Of a stretch of DNA of 64,000 nucleotides, positions 40,439 to 63,404 are shown one piece after another. The notes beneath the pieces are model-generated. The model was not told where the DNA came from. It was given only the letters and a program-made list of their open reading frames with translations, and did not search any database. The first letter of the stretch is position 1; each line of letters begins with the position of its first letter. The DNA is taken from positions 143,814-207,813 of IMG/VR virus record IMGVR_UViG_3300042302_000394; one strand, given 5' to 3'. Made by a program: the position numbers and the translations under genes.

Positions 40439-42403
40439 ATGCCTGATAGATCTATACAATTACTAACTGATGTTTTTCCAAATTCAACTACAAATCATGG
40501 TAATTTGAACAATCCCGATATAATACTAGTCCAGGCACCTGGATGGGGAGTGCAAACAGCTCCGCTTTCTTTAGCATCACTTTCAGCCTATGTTCGGCAG
40601 AAAGGATACAAGATTTTACCATTAGATTTAAATGTTGAATTTTTTGCTATTAGACCTGAGAAATTTTCCATAATGTGGGACATAGATCAATCTCAGTGGT
40701 TTTGGGAATCTAAAGACTGCGTTAATGACCTGTTAACCGAATACAAAAAAGAAATTGATGACTTTGTCGAGTTAGTGGTGTCGACTAATACACCATTAGT
40801 TGGATTTAGTTTATACAACACTTCAATGCATACTTCGATGCATCTTATCAAACTGCTCAAAGCACGTAAGCCTGAGCTAAAGATTATTGTCGGTGGTCCT
40901 CATGCCCACCGATATCTAGCTGGTAATGTTTTGGCAAAAAATCCGTTAATAGATGCAGTCGCCCAGGCTGAGGGAGAAGAAACATTAGTAGACATAATTG
41001 AGCGTGTTCGAAAAAATCAATCATTGCTCGATTGCCCTGGATTGTTAGTGTTTAAAGACGGAGCAGTACATGCTACTCCAACAAGGCCAATGATTCCAAA
41101 AATCGACACTCTTCCGATACCCCACTACAGTGATTTTTCATTAGCTCCTTACCTATCCCCAACACGATTACCAATGGCGTCTAGTCGAGGGTGTCCTAAT
41201 AAATGTATATTCTGTAATGAGCAACCTTATTGGGAATCATATCGATTTCGGTCTGCAGAAAGCATGATTGAAGAAGTTAAGTACCAATTAAAATTATATC
41301 CTGAAATTGACTTTATTGACTTTCAAGATAGTTTATGTAACGGGAAGATAAGCGCAATTGAAAAGTTTGCCGAATACCTCATTGAAAATAAAATTAAAAT
41401 ACAATGGGCCGGACAGGCAGTTATTAGAAAAGAAATGACCGAAGAACTGATGATAAAATTAAAACAGTCCGGATGTGTGGTCATGGCCTACGGATTAGAA
41501 ACTCCAAACCCTACACTTATGAGGAGTGTAGGAAAGTTATTATCAAAAGGTGCCGATATTGATAAAATTGCTGAATCTCATGCAAGGACCGGACTTAATG
41601 CAGTTTACAATGTCATGTTTGGGTTACCGGGAGAAACTGAAGAAGATTCATTAATGGTCTTAGAGTTTTTAAGACGTAATTCAAAAAATAAATTATATGT
41701 AAATCCCAGTGCAGCATTTTGCGGATTTGCTAACGGAACTCCTGGATGGGAGAACGCAGAAAAATTCGGTATTGACAAAACACTCGGCGGAACTTTTTGG
41801 AAAAGTGTAGATGGTAATAACACATTCCTAGTTCGATTAAAAAGATTTGAAGATTTTTGTCGATTAGTTTCCGACTTAGGTATAAAAACCACTTATCCGT
41901 CGACATATCTTCTCAATAGAAATCAAGTCATTGCCCAATATTATATTGCAATAGGTCAACCAGAAAAAGCAATATACTATTACACAGAATGGGTTAAAGA
42001 TCATCCCGAAGATCAAATAGCTAAAAAGTTTTTATTCGAATATTCAGGTTTCTTAAAAAGTACCCCAAGTTCAAATGTTTATGCAATTAGCCGGCATTCG
42101 GATGAGAATTGGTTAAATGGTGTTGCTAGAAATTGGGGGCCTGCAATATTATTTTCACATGTTCCTTACATTTTAGAAGAATTAACAGTTGGTAAAATTG
42201 TACAGTTTTCAGATCTTCAAACAAGAAAAATAATTAGAGTTGAAGATAATTTTGAAAATGATTGTATTGTAATACACCTCGACGGCACTCATTTAGATGG
42301 AGATCAAGTTGGTTGGCCAAAACTAATAACTGTTTTAGAGGAGCCTAGCAAAGTTATCCCTATTAAGATAGTTAATTACACAGAAATAGATTTTAAAAAA
42401 TGA
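40439..42403 (+). CDS. Cobalamin-binding radical SAM enzyme (class B methyltransferase-like) with C-terminal extension
   Basis: PLSLASL...D.N, VGGPH, EGEE, SRGCPNKCIFC, YGLET, MFGLPGET. Confidence 0.9.
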   Translation: MPDRSIQLLTDVFPNSTTNHGNLNNPDIILVQAPGWGVQTAPLSLASLSAYVRQKGYKILPLDLNVEFFAIRPEKFSIMWDIDQSQWFWESKDCVNDLLTEYKKEIDDFVELVVSTNTPLVGFSLYNTSMHTSMHLIKLLKARKPELKIIVGGPHAHRYLAGNVLAKNPLIDAVAQAEGEETLVDIIERVRKNQSLLDCPGLLVFKDGAVHATPTRPMIPKIDTLPIPHYSDFSLAPYLSPTRLPMASSRGCPNKCIFCNEQPYWESYRFRSAESMIEEVKYQLKLYPEIDFIDFQDSLCNGKISAIEKFAEYLIENKIKIQWAGQAVIRKEMTEELMIKLKQSGCVVMAYGLETPNPTLMRSVGKLLSKGADIDKIAESHARTGLNAVYNVMFGLPGETEEDSLMVLEFLRRNSKNKLYVNPSAAFCGFANGTPGWENAEKFGIDKTLGGTFWKSVDGNNTFLVRLKRFEDFCRLVSDLGIKTTYPSTYLLNRNQVIAQYYIAIGQPEKAIYYYTEWVKDHPEDQIAKKFLFEYSGFLKSTPSSNVYAISRHSDENWLNGVARNWGPAILFSHVPYILEELTVGKIVQFSDLQTRKIIRVEDNFENDCIVIHLDGTHLDGDQVGWPKLITVLEEPSKVIPIKIVNYTEIDFKK

Positions 42404-43182
42404 AAAGTTTTTTAAATCAATATAATGTTATATCTGAAGATATACCAGGGTCCTTACAATTTCCCAGTGCATTAGTATGGGACTCGTTATTAGGTTATCA
42501 AACCGAAAATAAAGTTGTGCGTAATTTTTTAGAAATAGGTGTATTACATGGAAAGTCTGCAATGCTAAGTGGGCTATATGCACAGGCCAACAACACACAG
42601 CAGGTGATTGTAGATCCCGGTGAATGGATGGACACAACTTATTCAAATTTACTATCAAAGATTGAGGGATTAAATCTAAGATTAATAAATGATTATTCTA
42701 ACAGTTTGGTGCATTTTCATTATTCTATTTTTCAAGAACATTCTCGCGATTATTCATGGTTTCATATTGATGGCGATCATAGTTATGCACAATGCTATAA
42801 AGATTTAATTTTAGCTGATCATTTTTTGTCTGACTATGGAGTTGTTATTGTTGATGATTTCTTTTCAACCATGTTTCCTCAGGTTACAGCTAGCACTTTT
42901 TCATATTTAGAAAAACATCCATTAAATTTAAAAATGTTTTTAGTTGGTCAATGTAATAAAGCATATCTATGCAGACCGCCAGCATTTGATTTTTATAAAA
43001 CGTTTTGCATAGATGTATTATCTAAAGATATGAAAGACCGAAAATATCCTGTAACTATAACTAAAACAACTTATCCTCAGGATTTTGATTGTTACGGGTA
43101 TCAACCCATAGGATGGACTGATGACAGAATGGAGTTTCGTGGTCCGGACTGGGATAGAACTAATTTTATAAAATATACCTAA
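42400..43182 (+). CDS. Class I SAM methyltransferase (Methyltransf_24-like)
   Basis: LEIGVLHGKS...HIDGDHSY...D...L...GV..VDD. Confidence 0.85.
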   Translation: MKSFLNQYNVISEDIPGSLQFPSALVWDSLLGYQTENKVVRNFLEIGVLHGKSAMLSGLYAQANNTQQVIVDPGEWMDTTYSNLLSKIEGLNLRLINDYSNSLVHFHYSIFQEHSRDYSWFHIDGDHSYAQCYKDLILADHFLSDYGVVIVDDFFSTMFPQVTASTFSYLEKHPLNLKMFLVGQCNKAYLCRPPAFDFYKTFCIDVLSKDMKDRKYPVTITKTTYPQDFDCYGYQPIGWTDDRMEFRGPDWDRTNFIKYT

Positions 43183-43185
43183 CAG

Positions 43186-44421
43186 TTAATTTTTCCACCA
43201 CGGCAAATATTTTTCTGTATTGTGATTTCGATAAGCATCCATCTTTTTTATTATCGAAACACTGTTTTTAAAATTTATATCTGACTCAGGTGTTCCGATT
43301 AAAAATGTAATCATTGCACTCAATATGTTAGCCTTTTCTTTAACTGCATCTTTTTCAAGTAGTTCTCTATTGTTTTCAAACCAGGTTGCAATTTCTTGAT
43401 ACACTGTATTTTTATAAGCTGTTGGTAAATTACTCGGGGATGCATAGCTTGGATCGTAGATATAATTTATGTGAGGAAAGTTTAAAATATTCTTTCCTTC
43501 CAACCTCACAATATAATCTAACAATTCTGTAAATTTATGTGTATTAAAAATAGAAAACACAGTGTGAAACTCGATACCAATATTTTCGTTTTCATTCGAA
43601 TATTGAACTATGCTATCAATATTATCTTTAACAATGTTCCATTTTCCAGGATATCTAATATATTCGTACATATCAGCAACAGCATCAATACTTACTTTAA
43701 TAGTCATAGTCTTAAAATGGCTCCAGATGTCAAACCATTTTGACGGTGTCACAGTTAAATTTGTATGTATAGATAAGTCAACCTGTTTAGATAAACCTGA
43801 ACTAATTAGTTCTTTACAAAATGTATAAAAATCGTTGTTGATTAATGGTTCACCACCGGTTACTAATATCTGCACTAATCCGTCAGTCTTTACTAGGTCA
43901 AGGATATGTTTAATTTGATCATAGTTCCATTGAGCTTTATAATCACTTTCTTTTTCACCCCATGGTTTAATGTTGAGGAATTTAAATTCTTTTATTAGTT
44001 GATCGCTAGCTCCCGGGGTACACATCTTGCATTGTAGATTACACTTATTCGACCAACTTAAATCTAAGTAATTTACATCAACAGATTCTAACTTGCCCGT
44101 ATGCATTTCAGTGTTTGTTATAATATCTTCAATCGGCCATCTCTTTACAAACCAATTTCTAACACTTTCACCCCCATTGTCCTCAACATTATAACAATGC
44201 TGGCACTCGGCCACCCGCTCGCCGTCTATCATTTTCTTTCTTATATTTTTTAATTGATCAATATTGTAAAATTCAATCAAACTTGTTATCTCATTTATTT
44301 TTACAAACTTGCCATCTTTCTTTAATCTTCCTGCATTAGTAGAATTACAACAAAGACGCATATTGCCATCAGTGTGTGTAGAAAAATGATTCCATGCTAA
44401 CGGGCAATATGTCTTAGTCAT
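43186..44421 (-). CDS. Radical SAM protein with N-terminal SPASM/twitch-like Cys cluster
   Basis: CPLAW...CC...CQHCY; NKCNLQCKMC; TGGEP. Confidence 0.9.
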   Translation of the reverse strand: MTKTYCPLAWNHFSTHTDGNMRLCCNSTNAGRLKKDGKFVKINEITSLIEFYNIDQLKNIRKKMIDGERVAECQHCYNVEDNGGESVRNWFVKRWPIEDIITNTEMHTGKLESVDVNYLDLSWSNKCNLQCKMCTPGASDQLIKEFKFLNIKPWGEKESDYKAQWNYDQIKHILDLVKTDGLVQILVTGGEPLINNDFYTFCKELISSGLSKQVDLSIHTNLTVTPSKWFDIWSHFKTMTIKVSIDAVADMYEYIRYPGKWNIVKDNIDSIVQYSNENENIGIEFHTVFSIFNTHKFTELLDYIVRLEGKNILNFPHINYIYDPSYASPSNLPTAYKNTVYQEIATWFENNRELLEKDAVKEKANILSAMITFLIGTPESDINFKNSVSIIKKMDAYRNHNTEKYLPWWKN

Positions 44422-45763
44422 GTTTAAAAGCATCTTTCAAGTCTGGAATATAATCGCCGATTGAAATTCCTCTATGGTCATCAAGTATTTTAATTCTATG
44501 TTTGAATACCTTAAACAGTTTCGGATTGTCAGGCTTGGTTAATTCATTTAATAACAAGTGTATCTTTCCATCTAGTCCGGGAAAATCTTTAATGACTTGA
44601 CTATTTTCTAGATATGCTGTTAATCTCTGTGTAGCTAAATCTTTCAGAGACTGTGGTAACATTGATATTTGTTGTTCCATCGGAAACATAATTAAGTTGA
44701 TGTTATATGGCCACTCTTTAAAGTATGGATGCACTTTGGCCTGTTCTTCTATAAAATATAATAGGCTATCTAAGTTAACAATGTTCAATGAGCTAACGGT
44801 GATATTATTCAATATCTTAACATTGCTGTGTTTCATATAACTCTTTGCTTCAATGTAATTCTTTGATACCTGGCGCCATTTACTAGGATATCTAGCATAA
44901 TCGTTGACTTTATCAAACCCGTCAATACTGGCAATGAGTTCAAACTTTTTAAACTTAGGCATTAACTCTAAAAAGTTTTTATTTAGGTTTGTAAAGTTAC
45001 TGGACAAAAATACAGTAATATTTTTAGCATGATCATTGTCTACAACATATTGCAGTGCCTTTAACACAAATGGCATAATTGTAGGTTCACCACCGGCAAA
45101 ACTTAATACTTCTAGTCCAGGTGCTAATTTTGTAAAACTTTCCCATATTTCTTCATTATCAGACCAATCGGGATGTTCGACATCTTTCCATGTTTTATTA
45201 TGTTCAGTGATTCCAAACACACTGGAAATTTCAATAAATCTTCCATCTAATACTTTGATGCCACCAAATTTATTATTAAGTTCACCTAACTCTTTAGCAA
45301 TCTGACTACTGTCGTAACTGTTGCACATGACACATTTAAGGTTGCACAAATTACTAGGCTTTAATTCTAAATATGTTGGTTGGTGTAACACTTCGTAACT
45401 GTTGTTTATGCTGTTGGCAACTATCTCTAATGTTTTTCGATTATTTTTATAATCTTCAATTGACCGTGTACGCATACTAACGTCGCCGTCTCGAATGCAA
45501 CGCCTGCAAGCATCAGGAGTATCTCCTGTATGTAATTTTTTTCTTAAATCAACAAGGTGTTCGCTGTTCCACGCATCACTAAAATTATCCCCGGATAAAA
45601 TGCTAATGATATCTCCGTTCGGGTGTGTCATTGTTCCTACATAATTACAACACGGTTTAAGGTGGCCAGCGGGATTAGAACTTAGTTGTGTAAAAGGATA
45701 AAAACAAAATGTCTCACTTTCAATAATTTCTGTTCTTAATTGATCAATCTTGTCCATATTCAT
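44414..45763 (-). CDS. Radical SAM protein with N-terminal SPASM/twitch-like Cys cluster
   Basis: CFYPF...PCC...CRRC; NLCNLKCVMC; AGGEP. Confidence 0.9.
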   Translation of the reverse strand: MNMDKIDQLRTEIIESETFCFYPFTQLSSNPAGHLKPCCNYVGTMTHPNGDIISILSGDNFSDAWNSEHLVDLRKKLHTGDTPDACRRCIRDGDVSMRTRSIEDYKNNRKTLEIVANSINNSYEVLHQPTYLELKPSNLCNLKCVMCNSYDSSQIAKELGELNNKFGGIKVLDGRFIEISSVFGITEHNKTWKDVEHPDWSDNEEIWESFTKLAPGLEVLSFAGGEPTIMPFVLKALQYVVDNDHAKNITVFLSSNFTNLNKNFLELMPKFKKFELIASIDGFDKVNDYARYPSKWRQVSKNYIEAKSYMKHSNVKILNNITVSSLNIVNLDSLLYFIEEQAKVHPYFKEWPYNINLIMFPMEQQISMLPQSLKDLATQRLTAYLENSQVIKDFPGLDGKIHLLLNELTKPDNPKLFKVFKHRIKILDDHRGISIGDYIPDLKDAFKHD

Positions 45764-48689
45764 TATTCCTTGTTGCTTCTAACACTAATTTCATTTCTGG
45801 TATGATTTCATAAGTATTCTCACCTCTTAACTTATCCAATTGTTCCGTCACTGTTACAAATTTCTTTGCTGATGTTAAATCAAATGGTTTTTTTAATTCA
45901 TGTATGATATGTGTTAAAAGATGATCTATGCTTGTATTATATGTTTCGTTGTGCTCTTTGACAAAAGTTTCTAATTTAATTACAGTCTCTGCACGATAAT
46001 CATCGGGTAGAATACTAACATGATAATGTGAAGGATGTTCTAACAAATTGATGAAGAAATTATTGTAATTAATAAATTTGGTTTTAGGATGTTGACGTAT
46101 AACTCCTATTGAAATCAAATGTTTAATAATTTCAGGAAATCTGCCAACATTCCAAGCACCTACAGTAATACCCGGGCGTATGATAGCATTATCTAATGTC
46201 ATCAATTCTTTTAGATTTGACTCAACCTTAGACCATACAGTGCCGGCTCGAATGAGTTCTGCACGTTCTCCAACTTCATCGATACTGGGCCATATTTCTA
46301 ATTTGCCAAAGTTCCATCGCCGCCAGTAGTCAATAACATTTTTCTTATTATAAGATAACACTGATGCATTTGTGTTATATGATAGTTTAACATCAAATCG
46401 TTGTTTTTCTACCAACATTTCTAAAATTTGCCAGTGTTCAGGCATGAGTAGAGGTTCGCCTCCAGCAAAGTAAATTCTTTCCACATGGTTAATTTGATCT
46501 TTTAGAAAATCAAAGTTATTCTTATCATCTACTGATTCGATGCTCCATATTTTTTCTTGATCAGTGAGGCCTAATTTTTTAGCATCCGGCACCCATGCTG
46601 AACTGTAACGTGGTCCGCAACTACGACATTTAAAATTGCAAAGATTACTAAAACGGAAATCCCAATACTTCAACTCCATAGTAGTGCATGTTCCGTCTGC
46701 TAGTGTAATTTCTGGAATTTTTTTTACTACCTCTGGAAAGTCTCTATTGTGATAGAAACGACCACTTTCACCAGTGACCCGTTCTCTATCAAAACATTTA
46801 CGGCATATTTCGGGCTCTTTGCCCCCTATCATATCTTTTCTTAAAGATTTCATATTGCCGCTGTTCCAAATTTCTTCAATGCTCTGATGTGTTAGATCAC
46901 CAGCAAAATAATTATGTACAGAGGTTAGGCAACACGGAATTACTTTTCCACTAGGTTCAAATGCAAGATGCATCCAGGGCACTGCACATATTGTGGTTGT
47001 ATTTGTTGCAACTGCAACTACATCTTCTTTTTTGACAATTTTAATAGGTTTGTAATCGAAGGCAGTTATTTTTTTTGAGTTGAACATTGTGAGTAACCAG
47101 GACCTGTTATTTATTTGTTGTAATGTTGGTGTATTTTTATTTGCATCAAAGAACTCTTTAGCAGAATGTACAGCAGATAATGCATAATTACCGAACGGCC
47201 TATCTACTCCCAGAGTCTCCCATGCTGCCAATCTATCAATAGCTTCAGCATTATCGGGATCTTGTGCAATGGTATTGCATAACTTAATTGTTTCCCTAAA
47301 TGCACTTCGCCATGTGGCAAACTCGTCTGTGTTAAATGTTGTAATGTTACTGACTTTATCGAAGACTTTTAATTTAGGAACAATAGTCGTCAGTAGGTCT
47401 AATGTTTTCCAAACTTTGATTTTGCCAAATGCCCGCTTAGGGAATAATTTAACGCCACCGTAACCATATTCTAAATCATTAACAGGATTCTTACTGTGCC
47501 AGACGTATGTACAGTCTCTATCAAATATCTCTGGTTGGTAGTCGAACTGCCAGTCATCGACTAAGTAAGCATCACCGTCGACTACATAGAACATGTCAGT
47601 CTTGGATAACTTAGCCGCTGCCTTATGTGCCTCAAAGATACCAGTAACACCATCCACACGTTTGGCATGTGGTGCTTTTTCTAAAACACGCTGCCAATTC
47701 TCTTCTGCATTAGATTCATGGTAACTAATAAAGATTACATCCAGTGTTTCGGCAATCAGAGGAGTAACTGTTCCTATTTCTTTAACACCCACAATCTCTG
47801 CACTGGGAGTAATTTTCAAAGCCCAAATCTTCTCCCCGTTTATTTCTTTGTCTAGATACCATATATGTTCATAGGCTAGATCGTGCCAAGGAATGTCGTA
47901 ATCTAAATCAAAACGCATTTCTGGTAGGCTAGGATTTTGTTCAATTTTAAACTCAGGACTAACTGTGCCTAACCATTCCCATTTAGAAGTTTTTTTACGT
48001 TTAGGTTCAAACTTAATCAACCAAGTACCTGGTTTTGGACTGTAGTTAGGATCCAGCTCAAGTGCAGTAACGTAATCCAGAAACCAAAATGGCGGATAAC
48101 ATTCGTTGACATCGATGAGTAGTTTAGGAAGATCAGGATTCCATGTAACTCGCATTTCAGGCATAACGTATCCCATGTCTTTCTCGCCTTTAACGTTGGC
48201 GCCAGGCACCTCACAAGTAAATGCCCATATTTTATCTTCTAAAGGATTGACTCTAGGATCAATGTACCAAACTAACGTATAGTCAGCATCGTCTTGATTA
48301 TATACATAACTTTCTATAGGATTAAATTCAAATGTAATAGAACTTGCTATTGCAGAATTCTTTTTCCAGATAGGCGTTTTTGCCCACATGTGATTCTTTG
48401 GTACTTCTATTTCATGTGTTTCATATCCAGCATATGGGTGCCACCCATCTTTAAACAGTTTGGCTACCCACTCACCTTTGTATGTCCAAACTAGACATTT
48501 TCTTGTTTTAGGCACATCATTTACAAAGTTCAAGACACTAGAATGTCTTGCATAAGGATTTATCACTAAGAATTCAGTATCGCCTTCACCTAAGTTGTAT
48601 AATTGTTGGTCATAATAAAACTCATCCCCTCCCCAGGGGATTTCTTTGATTAGGTCTGTATTGATTTTGGGGTATTGATCTAGAAGCAT
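45744..48689 (-). CDS. Fusion of aromatic-rich repeats, a glycosyltransferase-like (DxD) domain and a twitch radical SAM domain
   Basis: DVIFISY.E..AEENW...AHKAAA...YVVDGD...YGYGGVKL; then CAVPW...PCC...CRKC, NLCNFKCRSC, AGGEP. Confidence 0.85.
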   Translation of the reverse strand: MLLDQYPKINTDLIKEIPWGGDEFYYDQQLYNLGEGDTEFLVINPYARHSSVLNFVNDVPKTRKCLVWTYKGEWVAKLFKDGWHPYAGYETHEIEVPKNHMWAKTPIWKKNSAIASSITFEFNPIESYVYNQDDADYTLVWYIDPRVNPLEDKIWAFTCEVPGANVKGEKDMGYVMPEMRVTWNPDLPKLLIDVNECYPPFWFLDYVTALELDPNYSPKPGTWLIKFEPKRKKTSKWEWLGTVSPEFKIEQNPSLPEMRFDLDYDIPWHDLAYEHIWYLDKEINGEKIWALKITPSAEIVGVKEIGTVTPLIAETLDVIFISYHESNAEENWQRVLEKAPHAKRVDGVTGIFEAHKAAAKLSKTDMFYVVDGDAYLVDDWQFDYQPEIFDRDCTYVWHSKNPVNDLEYGYGGVKLFPKRAFGKIKVWKTLDLLTTIVPKLKVFDKVSNITTFNTDEFATWRSAFRETIKLCNTIAQDPDNAEAIDRLAAWETLGVDRPFGNYALSAVHSAKEFFDANKNTPTLQQINNRSWLLTMFNSKKITAFDYKPIKIVKKEDVVAVATNTTTICAVPWMHLAFEPSGKVIPCCLTSVHNYFAGDLTHQSIEEIWNSGNMKSLRKDMIGGKEPEICRKCFDRERVTGESGRFYHNRDFPEVVKKIPEITLADGTCTTMELKYWDFRFSNLCNFKCRSCGPRYSSAWVPDAKKLGLTDQEKIWSIESVDDKNNFDFLKDQINHVERIYFAGGEPLLMPEHWQILEMLVEKQRFDVKLSYNTNASVLSYNKKNVIDYWRRWNFGKLEIWPSIDEVGERAELIRAGTVWSKVESNLKELMTLDNAIIRPGITVGAWNVGRFPEIIKHLISIGVIRQHPKTKFINYNNFFINLLEHPSHYHVSILPDDYRAETVIKLETFVKEHNETYNTSIDHLLTHIIHELKKPFDLTSAKKFVTVTEQLDKLRGENTYEIIPEMKLVLEATRNNEYGQD

Positions 48690-56511: not shown

Positions 56512-56892
56512 ATGCGATACTACGATGAACTGGCAACTTACGAGCGCGATGGCTTTACTGTGATCGTAGACAAGAGCTACGAAGACCTGAACCCACGTGA
56601 TTGCTTTGACTTTGATAGTGAAGAAGAAGTTAGCAAGATGTGTAAAGACATCGACAATGGCAACTTGGATTGGTTCATGTTGCGAGTGCGTGTAATGGTT
56701 GACAGCCTTGAGATGGGTTCGCACTACCTGGGCGGATGTCTGTACAAGGATGCTCGCGAAGTACTGACAGACGGCACCGCAGAGGACTGCATCGGCGAAG
56801 CACTGCACGAAGCCAAACGCGAAGTCTACAAGTACAAACAAAAATTCGCTGAGTTGAGCGACATGGTTGATCGTGAAGGTGTTGATGTTTAA
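56512..56892 (+). CDS. Hypothetical early protein
   Basis: 126 aa, YLGGCLY motif. Confidence 0.8.
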   Translation: MRYYDELATYERDGFTVIVDKSYEDLNPRDCFDFDSEEEVSKMCKDIDNGNLDWFMLRVRVMVDSLEMGSHYLGGCLYKDAREVLTDGTAEDCIGEALHEAKREVYKYKQKFAELSDMVDREGVDV

Positions 56893-57115
56893 TAAGAATG
56901 AAGTACTACAGTGGGTGGGTGCCGTGGCGATCATTGCCGGGCACGTACTCAACGCAATAGGTCCCAGTGTCTATCCTTACAATATTATCGCGTTCGCTGT
57001 GGGCACTGTAGCGTTCTTGGCATGGGCTATCCGTGTGGCAAATAAGCCACAGGCTGTGGTCAACGTTGTATCATTAGCCATAGGCATTGTAGGGTTATAC
57101 AAAGCATTTGGTTGA
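56885..57115 (+). CDS. Small three-TM membrane protein
   Basis: Hydrophobic 76 aa; stop is the TGA of the next TTGACA. Confidence 0.75.
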   Translation: MFNKNEVLQWVGAVAIIAGHVLNAIGPSVYPYNIIAFAVGTVAFLAWAIRVANKPQAVVNVVSLAIGIVGLYKAFG

Positions 57116-57146
57116 CAAGTTGGTAAAACCTTGCTATAATAAGGCA

Positions 57147-57348
57147 TAGTAAGAAATAAACAGGGTTACCTAGTCCGTTAGGGCCCACAGCAAGCGAAGA
57201 GTTCCGACGGGGACAGGTTGCTGTGGGGCATGAAGGCAGTTGTAAACGAAAGTTTACACGAGTTGCTGACGGGGAACTAGGGCGTAATGTTTGGCACACC
57301 GAACGTTAGAGACGGACTAACGGGTAGTTGACAATCCCCTGTTTTCTT
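57147..57348 (+). ncRNA. Candidate structured non-coding RNA B
   Basis: Perfect TTGACA-17-TATAAT upstream, no RBS or ORF, multi-stem junction (see findings). Confidence 0.75.
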
Positions 57349-57382
57349 GCTATAATACACACTTACACACTAAGGAGCAAAG

Positions 57383-57652
57383 ATGAAAGCACTAGAGAAG
57401 TTTATCGAGCAGAAGAATCACTGGAACAGTTTCTTCAAAGGCGAGCAATACGAGATCCAGAGTGCCAAGGGTCGCCAGCGTATCGCAGACATGATCGATG
57501 CCGCATTGAGTCCGGAGAACTTGACCTGTGATGGCGAACTGAGCCGCACAGAAGTCAATCGTCGCTACAAGGAACTGATGACTGCGGCAAAGCAGTTGAA
57601 GAAGTTGGACCCGGCTGTTTCTTTTTACGAGTGGGAAGAGGAGATCATCTAA
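57383..57652 (+). CDS. Hypothetical early protein
   Basis: AAGGAG RBS; LSPENLTCDGE motif. Confidence 0.85.
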   Translation: MKALEKFIEQKNHWNSFFKGEQYEIQSAKGRQRIADMIDAALSPENLTCDGELSRTEVNRRYKELMTAAKQLKKLDPAVSFYEWEEEII

Positions 57653-62819: not shown

Positions 62820-63009
62820 AGTCTATCAGGAAACCACACAGTGGACAGACAGCAACGCCGGTAACCATGTCTACATCTTCAACGAGCGGGTTACAGGTCG
62901 AAGTGCCACAGCTATTGCCTACATACCTGCGGGCACAGATCAGGTAAAGAAGTTCCGTACACCGCTCAAGCTGGATCTCAAAGGGCGAACATTTAAAGAG
63001 TTGACTTGA
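62800..63009 (+). CDS. Hypothetical early protein
   Basis: 69 aa; ETT.W...NH.Y...R.F pattern. Confidence 0.7.
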   Translation: MTSKSIKVYQETTQWTDSNAGNHVYIFNERVTGRSATAIAYIPAGTDQVKKFRTPLKLDLKGRTFKELT

Positions 63010-63035: not shown

Positions 63036-63323
63036 ATGAAACGAATCCTTACTTCAATCGCACTGATCGCATCCTTGGGCACTGCACAGGCAGCTGGTCC
63101 AGAGGATGTCTTGCTGGGTATCATCCTAGGCGGATTCATAGGCAATTCAATGGCTAAACAACAGCCCGTTCAGCCTCCTGTAATCGTTCAACAACCTCCT
63201 GTGATCTACCAACCACAACCGCAGATCATCTACCAACCCTTGCCCCCACAGCCGGTATGCTACCATACTCCGGTCTATAACGGCTATGGTCAGTTCTTTG
63301 GCTGGCGCACTCACTGTAGATAA
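63036..63323 (+). CDS. Exported or membrane Pro/Gln-rich protein
   Basis: Signal peptide, glycine-zipper-like LLGIILGGFIG, QPPVIYQP repeats; ATG 6 nt after TATAAT. Confidence 0.75.
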   Translation: MKRILTSIALIASLGTAQAAGPEDVLLGIILGGFIGNSMAKQQPVQPPVIVQQPPVIYQPQPQIIYQPLPPQPVCYHTPVYNGYGQFFGWRTHCR

Positions 63324-63329
63324 AGATTC

Positions 63330-63404
63330 CTGGCCATAGTTCAATGGACAGAACATCTGCCTTCTAAGCAGTCAATCCAGGTTCGATTCCTGGTGGCCGG
63401 ACCA
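63330..63404 (+). tRNA. tRNA-Arg (anticodon TCT)
   Basis: Acceptor CTGGCCA/TGGCCGG, D arm GTTC/GAAC, anticodon loop CTTCTAA, T loop TTCGATT, encoded CCA. Confidence 0.95.

What the first reader, a model, noticed from the sequence alone, without database searches (positions are those of the whole stretch)
57112..57348. Candidate ncRNA B: a multi-stem RNA occupying a gene slot in the early cassette array
Seen: a perfect TTGACA-17-TATAAT promoter with the operator motif is followed not by an RBS and ORF but by about 190 nt of near-continuous pairing. The closing stem is TAGTCCGTT(57171)/GACGGACTA(57311), extended by AAACAGGG(57158)/CCCTGTTT(57337). Arm 1 is CCCACAGCAA(57184)/TTGCTGTGGG(57218). 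Arm 2 is TGTAAAC-GAAA-GTTTACA (GNRA loop) on GGCAGT/GTTGCT. Arm 3 is TAATGTTTGG-CACA-CCGAACGTTA. AGTTCC(57200) in the arm 1 loop complements GGAACT(57273), a possible pseudoknot or switch, and GACGGGGA occurs twice. Several G-U pairs fit the plus strand. Inference: an early-expressed functional RNA (decoy, antitoxin or anti-defence RNA, or ribozyme) of a class I do not recognise.
Basis: partly seen in the sequence, partly recalled or inferred. Interest (0 to 1): 0.85.

Follow-up and report, generated by a model that had tools for sequence, protein, structure and literature searches.

The report
New structured RNA of uncultivated phages
The 200-base gap behind a strong early promoter encodes a conserved, intricately folded RNA found in many uncultivated freshwater-type phages, often sitting exactly where a tRNA gene would sit, that matches no described RNA family and whose job is still unknown.

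Summary
Window 57146-57353 (+) follows a perfect TTGACA-17-TATAAT promoter. It has no credible ORF and folds far better than shuffles (z = -6.1 on +, -2.5 on -).

It belongs to a family with at least 84 distinct loci in IMG/VR phage contigs. None was found in 185,579 bacterial and archaeal genomes, in cultured phages, or in Rfam 15.

Comparative analysis gives a long closing helix P1 and a three-way junction. One arm is a P2 domain carrying P3 and P4. The other is a 3' domain with hairpin P6. 88-92% of cells pair, against 41-49% when partners are slid, with hundreds of compensatory changes.

- Confirmed: the outer stem, arm 1 and arm 2.
- Not supported: the inner closing stem TAGTCCGTT/GACGGACTA, the outer part of arm 3, and the pseudoknot.

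In other phages the RNA lies inside tRNA arrays, always co-oriented. P1 often ends 0-4 nt before the next tRNA, usually tRNA-Asp.

Best reading: a discrete, stable, trans-acting phage RNA that acts as a protein-binding scaffold or decoy. That function is inferred, not shown. It appears to be a new RNA class.

The parts
57112..57140 (+). Sigma-70-type promoter of the RNA: -35 TTGACA 57112-57117, 17-nt spacer with GTTGGTAAAACC, TG-extended -10 TATAAT 57135-57140. Predicted start is about 57146-57148.
   Evidence: 12 of 12 consensus positions. It is one of about 17 such promoters on the + strand of the early array. The transcription start is inferred.
57146..57353 (+). Whole RNA gene, measured between the outermost P1 pairs, about 208 nt. 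The covariance model matches 57152-57350.
   Evidence: 103 bits, E = 7e-30, single copy in the window. (z = -6.1). (more conserved than the flanking genes).
57146..57165 (+). P1 5' strand: ATAGTAAGAAA, then a TAA bulge, then ACAGGG.
   Evidence: P1 covaries in the family: every one of 7 outer pairs shows changes on both sides. P1 is 19-32 bp in relatives.
57337..57353 (+). P1 3' strand: CCCTGT plus TTTCTTGCTAT. It runs into the spacer and -10 of the next promoter.
57166..57182 (+). Junction TTA, then the P2a 5' strand CCTAGT (57169-57174), the P2b 5' strand CCGTT (57175-57179), then junction AGG. Together these form the near-invariant family signature GGTTACCTAnnCCnnTAGG.
   Evidence: P2 96-100% paired, with compensatory changes.
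57183..57228 (+). The apical hairpin is GTTCC-GACG-GGGAC at 57201-57214.
   Evidence: CAC/GTG becomes TGT/ACA in L021; helices 5-7; the apical tetraloop is GACG in 39 and GCCG in 26 of 78 members.
57229..57234 (+). Conserved junction CATGAA between P3 and P4.
   Evidence: YAYGAA or CAAGAA in all 78 members.
57235..57267 (+). The base is GGCAG/TTGCT. The hairpin is TGTAAAC-GAAA-GTTTACA at 57241-57258.
   Evidence: Length and loop vary across the family (GNRA, UUCG and other loops) and the stem covaries.
57268..57281 (+). P2 3' strand: GACGG (P2b), a GGA bulge, then ACTAGG (P2a).
57282..57289 (+). Junction GCGTAATG, carrying the family-invariant GTAATG.
57289..57304 (+). Hairpin specific to this clade, GTTTGG-CACA-CCGAAC. 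It stands where most family members have helix P5.
   Evidence: the 5-bp core is kept in L019, L021 and L053. P5 in the majority type is shown.
57305..57321 (+). P6 hairpin GTTAG-AGACGGA-CTAAC with the conserved AGACG loop.
   Evidence: four pairs changed on both sides among five close relatives. AGA[CU]G in 71 of 78 members.
57328..57356 (+). Promoter of the next gene, embedded in the 3' part of the RNA: -35 TTGACA 57328-57333 and -10 TATAAT 57351-57356. Its spacer is the P1 3' strand.
   Evidence: In relatives such as L027, L031, L040 and L197 the TTGAC is the 3' strand of P5.
57383..57652 (+). Downstream 89-aa gene with its own RBS. It is a neighbour, not part of the RNA.
   Evidence: More than 580 relatives exist in IMG/VR, most of them without the RNA directly upstream.

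Best explanation
Window 57146-57353 (+) is a gene for a discrete, roughly 200-nt structured non-coding RNA, called RNA-B here. It belongs to a previously undescribed family restricted to uncultivated, mostly large phages.

Shown:
- The fold is a long closing helix P1 of about 20-30 bp.
- P1 closes a three-way junction with near-invariant joining strands: UUA, NNGUAAUGA and UU.
- One arm, P2, carries a second junction with hairpins P3 and P4.
- The other arm carries hairpin P6.
- P3 and P6 both display a G(A/C)CG loop motif.

Inferred:
- In this phage the RNA is made from its own consensus sigma-70 early promoter.
- In many other phages it is co-transcribed inside tRNA arrays. There the enzymes that mature the flanking tRNAs would release it, because P1 begins or ends within 0-4 nt of the neighbouring tRNAs.
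- In the window, which has no flanking tRNA and no terminator, release from the read-through transcript most likely needs cleavage in or next to the long P1 duplex. RNase III is the obvious candidate.
- The mature RNA would then act in trans during infection. The most likely role is a protein-binding scaffold or decoy that uses the conserved junction and the two GACG loops, aimed at host or phage RNA or translation machinery.
For: Real and non-coding:
- z = -6.1 on the + strand only.
- No ORF or RBS.
- Hairpin lengths vary by non-multiples of 3.
- Invariant G-U pairs fit the + strand only.

Conserved beyond its neighbours:
- 97.6% identity against 72.8% and 87.8% in L054.
- 100% against 96.8% and 93.6% in L007.

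Family:
- 101 covariance-model hits between 46 and 201 bits.
- 84 distinct loci.

Structure:
- 92.5% of cells paired against 41-49% when slid, and 492 double-change cells against 37-132.
- The full 61-pair consensus gives 88% against 41-45%, and 764 against 154-208.

Phage-only and undescribed:
- 0 hits in GTDB genomes.
- 0 in cultured phages.
- No Rfam match.
- No literature match.

Discrete trans-acting product:
- All 580 tRNAs in the 84 loci are co-oriented with the RNA, and the nearest tRNA is within 100 nt in 32 of them.
- P1 ends 0-4 nt before the next tRNA in about 20 loci. An upstream tRNA ends 2 nt before P1 in L142, L162 and L191.
- The genomic position relative to protein genes varies.

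Loop motifs.
Against: - No expression data were available, so the transcript ends, stability and early timing are all inferred.
- No conserved protein partner was found next to the RNA. The scaffold or decoy role therefore rests only on analogy and on the pattern of conserved unpaired nucleotides.
- No terminator follows the RNA in the window. It could remain the 5' leader of the 89-aa gene's mRNA.
- The window's clade has lost helix P5 and replaced it with a local hairpin. Its version may work somewhat differently from the majority type.
Confidence: 0.55

Rival explanations
1. RNA-only assembly. Like ROOL and GOLLD, the RNA self-associates into a defined multimer and works without a dedicated protein partner.
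For: - It has the same genomic habitat as ROOL and GOLLD: phages, near tRNA islands, function unknown (quoting bioRxiv 10.1101/2024.12.08.627333).
- Many conserved unpaired nucleotides point to tertiary contacts.
- No partner gene was found.
Against: - It is three to four times smaller than ROOL or GOLLD.
- No self-complementary conserved loop is present. The ACGU in the P6 loop is replaced by ACGG in about half of the members.
- No homology to those families was found.
Confidence: 0.1
2. Ligand-binding aptamer acting in trans. One possibility is a sponge for a nucleotide second messenger of host immunity. Another is a sensor of a metabolite.
For: - Nested three-way junctions with about 50 highly conserved unpaired nucleotides resemble riboswitch aptamers.
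- A strong early promoter fits a counter-defence role.
Against: - No riboswitch family matched, even weakly.
- There is no expression platform and no constant downstream gene.
- There is nothing that points to any particular ligand.
Confidence: 0.08
3. Cis-acting element. On this reading it is a 5' leader that stabilises or regulates the downstream 89-aa gene's mRNA, or a DNA/RNA element whose main job is to carry the next promoter.
For: - No terminator lies between the RNA and the 89-aa gene.
- The next promoter is embedded in the RNA's 3' part.
- The RNA and the 89-aa gene are adjacent in about 24 fetched loci.
Against: - Most of the more than 580 homologues of the 89-aa gene lack the RNA directly upstream. 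Diverged RNA copies sit elsewhere in the same loci.
- In 32 of 84 loci the RNA is flanked by tRNAs rather than by a coding gene.
- The downstream gene has its own perfect promoter.
Confidence: 0.1
4. Ribozyme or tRNA-linked factor. The RNA would self-cleave, or it would bind or process tRNA-Asp. For example it might present GAC/GAU Asp codons in its loops to the GUC anticodon.
For: - The next gene downstream is tRNA-Asp(GTC) in 24 of 38 loci that have a close downstream tRNA.
- The P6 loop is AGACG, or AGAUG in a few members, and the P3 loop is GACG in half of the members. All contain Asp codons.
Against: - The P3 loop is GCCG in a third of the members.
- The array order may simply be inherited.
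- The window's lineage has no adjacent tRNA-Asp.
- No T-box, RNase P or self-cleaving ribozyme model matches.
- The UGGU that could pair with a tRNA 3' end is paired inside P5, with covariation.
Confidence: 0.07

Closest known systems
ROOL (RF03087) and GOLLD (RF01998) RNAs
   Same: They are phage or prophage encoded, often next to tRNA islands, elaborately structured and supported by covariation. Neither has a known function or a partner gene (for RNA-B).
   Different: They are 500-800+ nt and form large homo-oligomeric cages, whereas RNA-B is about 200 nt. There is no sequence or structure homology (no Rfam hit at E <= 10). ROOL and GOLLD also occur in bacterial genomes as prophages. RNA-B was absent from 185,579 genomes.
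Phage T4 species 1 and species 2 stable RNAs (rnaC, rnaD)
   Same: They are small stable RNAs of unknown function, encoded in tandem at the end of a phage tRNA cluster, co-oriented with the tRNAs and matured from the same transcripts. That they are processed from tRNA precursor transcripts is established textbook knowledge, not tested here.
   Different: They are 139 and 119 nt. rnaC carries a tRNA-like T arm. The RNA-B covariance model finds nothing there beyond trivial hairpins. They are therefore analogous in context but not homologous.
Bacterial Y RNAs (YrlA) bound by Ro60/Rsr
   Same: They have a long stem formed by the 5' and 3' ends that closes a structured module. Some are phage encoded near tRNAs. 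That last point is recalled from Chen et al. 2014 (RNA) and was not checked here.
   Different: The YrlA module mimics a tRNA and has a GGUUCGAAUCC-type T arm. RNA-B has no such arm and no YrlA Rfam hit. No TROVE/Ro60 protein turned up among the window ORFs that were scanned.
UG27 reverse-transcriptase ncRNA arrays of phages (bioRxiv 10.64898/2026.09.22.753630)
   Same: They are recently found phage-encoded structured ncRNAs of 135-167 nt that lie outside Rfam.
   Different: They occur as multi-unit arrays next to a reverse transcriptase and two accessory genes, in gut phages. RNA-B is single copy, with two copies in one locus only. It has no reverse transcriptase nearby.

Membership tests
Any Rfam 15 family (4227 models) | Score at or above the family's gathering threshold, or at least a suggestive E-value, against its covariance model. 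| tested here: not met
   - Whole window at gathering threshold: only tRNA-Arg.
- Window 56900-57500 at E <= 10: only a chance CRISPR-DR24 hit of 14.5 bits against a threshold of 35.
- Twelve family loci at gathering threshold: only tRNAs.
- A typical member, L133:5020-5365, at E <= 10: only a chance lncRNA hit.
tRNA / tmRNA | Cloverleaf or tRNA-like domain detected by ARAGORN or by the Rfam tRNA and tmRNA models. | tested here: not met
   ARAGORN finds only tRNA-Arg at 63330-63404 in the window. Rfam gave no hit on the RNA.
Y RNA / YrlA | A tRNA-like module with T-arm and D-arm mimics, closed by a Ro-binding stem, with a Ro60 (TROVE) gene in the genome. | tested here: not met
   No YrlA or Y_RNA model hit. 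No TROVE domain among the 27 window ORFs scanned. The rest of the roughly 208-kb phage genome could not be examined.
ROOL / GOLLD | Homology to RF03087 or RF01998, and a length above 500 nt. | tested here: not met
   No hits. Family length is 168-242 nt for full copies.
T4 rnaC / rnaD | Sequence and structure homology to the T4 species 1 and 2 RNAs. | tested here: not met
   The covariance model was run with filters off on T4 68.0-74.0 kb. No hit fell on rnaC or rnaD beyond short hairpins of 12 bits or less located elsewhere.
Type III antitoxin RNA (ToxI-like) | Tandem direct repeats of about 34-36 nt, next to an endoribonuclease toxin gene. | tested here: not met
   The RNA is a single non-repetitive unit. 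No adjacent conserved toxin-like gene was found.
Reverse-transcriptase-associated ncRNAs (retron msr-msd, DRT, UG27) | An adjacent reverse-transcriptase gene. | tested here: not met
   No recurrent RT-like neighbour within +/-4 kb in 84 loci or within the tRNA-array loci. None was found in the window ORFs scanned.
Riboswitch or T-box leader | A constant position upstream of a functionally coherent gene set, an expression platform, and a match to a known aptamer model. | tested here: not met
   The downstream neighbour varies: tRNA-Asp, Glu, Leu, Ser, Ile, Met or Gln, or unrelated small ORFs. No model match.
New family 'RNA-B' as defined here | All of the following: P1 closing a three-way junction; GGUUACCUAnnCCnnUAGG; YAYGAA; GUAAUG(A); a P6 hairpin with an AGACG loop; a high score against model R1. 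| tested here: met
   The window copy scores 103 bits, E = 7e-30, full length 1-200 of 200. All listed motifs are present. It lacks the majority-type P5 and GGUUCC, as do its close relatives.

The most novel reading that the evidence does not exclude
RNA-B is a phage counter-defence or takeover RNA of a new kind. It would be an abundant early RNA that uses its two GACG-displaying loops and conserved junction to trap a host factor. That factor could be a tRNA-directed or RNA-directed defence nuclease or another RNA-binding protein, or it could be an immune signalling nucleotide. This would explain why phages place the RNA among the tRNAs they carry to survive tRNA-targeting defences.
Probability: 0.15. 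Interest if true: 0.9.

Novelty: categorically new. Interest (0 to 1): 0.74.

Why it matters
Large structured RNAs with strong covariation and no known function are rare. In the past such RNAs have led to new biology, including riboswitches, ribozymes and RNA cages.

This one is widespread in uncultivated, often jumbo phages. It is under stronger constraint than its neighbouring genes. It occupies tRNA slots in phage tRNA arrays.

That links it to two old open questions. What are the non-tRNA stable RNAs of phage tRNA clusters for, such as T4 species 1 and 2, GOLLD and ROOL? And why do phages carry tRNA arrays at all?

At about 200 nt with a clear secondary structure, the RNA is small enough for direct structural and biochemical work. 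The window copy comes with its own E. coli-type promoter, so it can be expressed in a laboratory strain as it stands.

Tried and rejected
1. Known RNA family: four Rfam searches, including permissive ones, gave nothing.
2. Protein-coding: only a 28-aa GTG ORF on + and a 79-aa GTG ORF on -, neither with an RBS. The family's indels are not multiples of three.
4. Alternative pairing of the P6 loop (ACGGU) with the P2b 5' strand (ACCGU), as a possible switch. P2b variants (CCACU, CCGCU, CCGUU) do not correlate with P6 loop variants (GACGU or GACGG).
5. Homology to T4 rnaC or rnaD: none.
6. Presence in cultured phages or in E. coli: none by blastn.
7. Presence in cellular genomes: none in 185,579 species representatives.
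8. Conserved protein partner by neighbourhood clustering. The early-cassette loci show only the same small early genes. The tRNA-array loci show nothing present in more than 8 of 41 loci.
9. Paralogues in the window: none.
10. Companion RNA-A in the window: absent by sequence.
11. Mimicry of, or complementarity to, rRNA. GGUUACC, UACACCG and GACGG resemble or complement short 16S 3'-domain strings as recalled from memory. The matches are 5-8 nt only, and blastn against E. coli genomes found nothing, so this was dropped as chance.
12. Hammerhead-like core. GUAAUGA differs from CUGAUGA at essential positions and no GAAA strand is present, so this was dropped.
13. Overlap with the 8,495 candidate structured RNAs from IMG/VR (PMC10690425). 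It could not be checked because no supplementary files are held. Those candidates are 29-151 nt, so at most a fragment could coincide.
14. A relaxed pattern scan to widen the family added only about 6 members plus one doubtful 139-nt mini-variant.

Full report
**The sequence itself.** The window is part of an uncultivated large phage. It is identical to IMG/VR contig IMGVR_UViG_3300042302_000394 (208 kb) and has no close relative among 50,697 cultured-phage records. From 54.6 to 63.8 kb the + strand carries about 17 perfect or near-perfect TTGACA-17-TATAAT promoters, each in front of a small gene. 20 matches were found against 0.83 expected. The promoter at 57112-57140 is one of them. Its spacer holds GTTGGTAAAACC, a motif shared with six other promoters.

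What follows that promoter is not a gene. The only + strand ORF is 28 aa with a GTG start and no RBS. The next perfect promoter begins at 57328, and the next real gene, with a GGAG RBS, starts at 57383. The intervening RNA folds at -79.8 kcal/mol, against -55.8 +/- 3.9 for shuffles (z = -6.1; 0 of 200 shuffles as good). Its reverse complement gives only z = -2.45.

**Homologues.** The 89-aa downstream gene has more than 580 relatives in IMG/VR. Only about 24 of the 103 loci first fetched have the RNA in the same place. There it is 89-100% identical, and always more conserved than both flanking genes. In L054 the figures are 97.6% for the RNA against 72.8% and 87.8% for the genes.

A profile search found diverged copies elsewhere in other loci. 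These share a 5' signature, GGTTACCTAnnCCnnTAGG, and a central GTAATG. A covariance model built from 55 non-redundant copies (R1) gave these results:
- One copy in the window, at 57152-57350 (103 bits, E = 7e-30).
- 101 copies in 100 pattern loci, scoring 46-201 bits, one per locus except a tandem pair in L199.

In all there are at least 84 distinct loci. The same pattern has no match in one genome from each of 185,579 bacterial and archaeal species. Typical members have no blastn match in cultured phages or in E. coli genomes.

**Structure.** Single-sequence folds of diverse members agree with each other. On the model-guided alignment of 73 distinct sequences, 92.5% of cells form standard pairs, against 41-49% when the 3' partners are slid by 1-3 columns. 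There are 492 cells with changes on both sides, against 37-132 for the slid controls. No column shuffle out of 500 reached the observed value. An RNAalifold consensus on the same alignment has 61 pairs. It shows 88% pairing against 41-45% slid, and 764 double-change cells against 154-208. Every helix carries compensatory changes. A mutual-information scan recovers the same helices, including P5, and finds no pseudoknot.

In window coordinates the fold is:
- P1: 57146-57156 plus 57160-57165, pairing with 57337-57342 plus 57343-57353.
- Junction UUA: 57166-57168.
- P2a: 57169-57174 with 57276-57281.
- P2b: 57175-57179 with 57268-57272.
- Junction AGG.
- P3: 57184-57193 with 57218-57227, and an apical GTTCC-GACG-GGGAC.
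- Junction CATGAA: 57229-57234.
- P4: 57235-57239 with 57263-57267, and hairpin 57241-57258.
- Junction GCGTAATG.
- A clade-specific hairpin: 57289-57304.
- P6: 57305-57309 with 57317-57321, loop AGACGGA.
- Then GGGTAG-TTGACA-AT and the P1 3' strand.

Most family members have a helix P5 (ACC-GUNNA with UNNAC-AAU-GGU) that encloses P6, followed by GGUAGANAUAGAU. The window's clade has replaced P5 with the local hairpin.

- Right: the promoter, the absence of an ORF, the outer stem, arm 1 (P3), arm 2 (P4 with its base), the repeated GACGGGGA, and G-U pairs favouring the + strand. One U-G pair is invariant in all 73 sequences.
- Wrong: the inner closing stem. TAGTCCGTT pairs with GACGG/ACTAG at 57268-57280, not with GACGGACTA at 57311. 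In close relatives GACGGACTA becomes GACGGACCG or GACGGATCG, together with matching changes in GTTAG. This shows it is the loop and 3' strand of P6.
- Wrong: the outer part of arm 3 conflicts with P6.
- Wrong: the proposed pseudoknot does not covary.

**Genomic habit of the family.** In the 84 distinct loci, all 580 predicted tRNAs lie on the same strand as the RNA. In 32 loci the nearest tRNA is within 100 nt. Where a tRNA follows closely, P1's last pair is 0-4 nt from the tRNA's first base in about 20 loci. In L142, L162 and L191 an upstream tRNA ends 2 nt before P1 begins. The following tRNA is tRNA-Asp(GTC) in 24 of 38 cases.

The RNA thus occupies a tRNA slot. Maturation of its neighbours would release it with the long P1 as its termini. 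That step follows from established knowledge of tRNA processing and was not tested. In the window's lineage the RNA and the single tRNA (tRNA-Arg, 63330-63404) instead sit in separate promoter-driven cassettes.

In this sigma-70 lineage the 3' 30 nt of the RNA double as the next gene's promoter. In relatives such as L027, L031, L040 and L197 the -35 TTGACA is the 3' strand of P5, and TATAAT follows the P1 3' strand at the correct spacing. No terminator follows the RNA in the window. Its 3' end must therefore come from processing, most plausibly in or beside the 17-bp-plus P1 duplex. That point is an inference.

**Clues to function.** About 50 unpaired nucleotides in the junctions are nearly invariant. 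The P3 apical tetraloop is GACG in 39 and GCCG in 26 of 78 members, and the 7-nt P6 loop contains AGA[CU]G in 71 of 78. Two hairpins thus present the same short motif.

P4's loop is free to vary (GNRA, UUCG and 6-nt loops). P1 covaries freely but is kept at 19-32 bp.

No protein family is consistently adjacent. The window ORFs that were scanned encode tail fibres, radical-SAM enzymes, glycosyltransferases, a ligase and small early proteins, but no obvious RNA-binding partner.

I therefore favour a discrete, stable, trans-acting RNA that works as a scaffold or decoy for a protein encoded elsewhere in the phage or the host. The rivals are listed separately:
- an RNA-only assembly;
- a ligand sponge;
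- a cis leader;
- a ribozyme or tRNA-Asp-linked factor.

That the RNA is real, structured and belongs to a family is close to certain. The mechanism is a reasoned guess.

**Comparison with what is known.** By context the nearest things are ROOL and GOLLD. Both are phage RNAs near tRNA islands with no known function. The T4 species 1 and 2 RNAs are also close. By sequence and structure RNA-B is related to none of them. It fails the defining features of Y RNAs, tmRNA, type III antitoxins, RT-associated ncRNAs and riboswitch leaders, as set out in the membership table.

Full-text searches by topic and by sequence strings found no description. One caveat remains. On present evidence this is a new RNA class.

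Noticed in passing
L114:8640-8800(-), L133:5040-5155, L107, L121, L152, L105, L159, L122 (alignment A6): A second conserved non-coding element of about 115 nt lies directly upstream of RNA-B, behind a TTGACA-17-TATAAT promoter with no promoter in between. Its sequence runs AAGGCGATCCTCAAATG...GGGTTGTAACC...CGAGTTTGGAGACTCGGCCTAAGC. Compensatory changes are visible: GAACCC/GGGTT against GGACCC/GGGTC, and GCGAGT/ACTCGG against GAGAGT/ACTCTG. It has no Rfam hit and is absent from the window by sequence. It is probably another new phage RNA, co-transcribed with RNA-B.
   Followed up: partly
L110, L200, L209 (about 96 nt); L141, L170 (about 145 nt); L119, L145 (130-186 nt); all between RNA-B and the next tRNA: The spacers between RNA-B and the following tRNA in several tRNA arrays are themselves conserved between unrelated contigs and rich in hairpins. 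This suggests further unannotated small RNAs in these arrays.
   Followed up: no
window 57328-57356, and L027, L031, L040, L197: The promoter of the next gene is built from the RNA's own 3' part. The -35 is the P5 3' strand (or the equivalent position in the window), the spacer is the P1 3' strand, and the -10 follows immediately. This promoter lacks the GTTGGTAAAACC spacer motif of its neighbours.
   Followed up: partly
window 54618, 55010, 55798, 56218, 57112, 60277, 62186 (promoter spacers): Seven of the roughly 17 early promoters share the spacer motif (G)TTGGTAAAACC between -35 and -10, and two more carry diverged versions. It could be an operator for a common regulator.
   Followed up: no
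L199:65-532(-): Two diverged copies of RNA-B lie in direct tandem, scoring 175 and 151 bits. This is the only locus with more than one copy.
   Followed up: no
L254:515-653(-), L257:12192-12330(+): A 139-nt element has the same junction core but a much reduced P2 domain: P1, UUA, CCUACC...CUGUAGG, then UGGUAAUGA. The covariance-model hit is weak (16.7 bits, E = 0.009). It may be a distant mini-variant of the family or a chance match.
   Followed up: no
window 56867-57115 (+): The small membrane protein just upstream of the RNA gives a weak DUF6552 match below the Pfam cut-off. It is the most frequent upstream neighbour of RNA-B in the early-cassette lineage, in 35 of 84 loci at a median of -307 nt. 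This is probably shared ancestry rather than a functional link.
   Followed up: partly
window 40439-48689: A cluster of four radical-SAM proteins (one with a B12-binding domain, two with SPASM domains), plus a methyltransferase, lies next to tail-fibre genes. This is unusual cargo for a phage and suggests a modification pathway.
   Followed up: no
window 63036-63404 (+): tRNA-Arg(TCT) sits 7 nt after the stop codon of a 95-aa proline- and glutamine-rich ORF, with no promoter of its own detected between them. It is apparently co-transcribed from the promoter at 63001.
   Followed up: no
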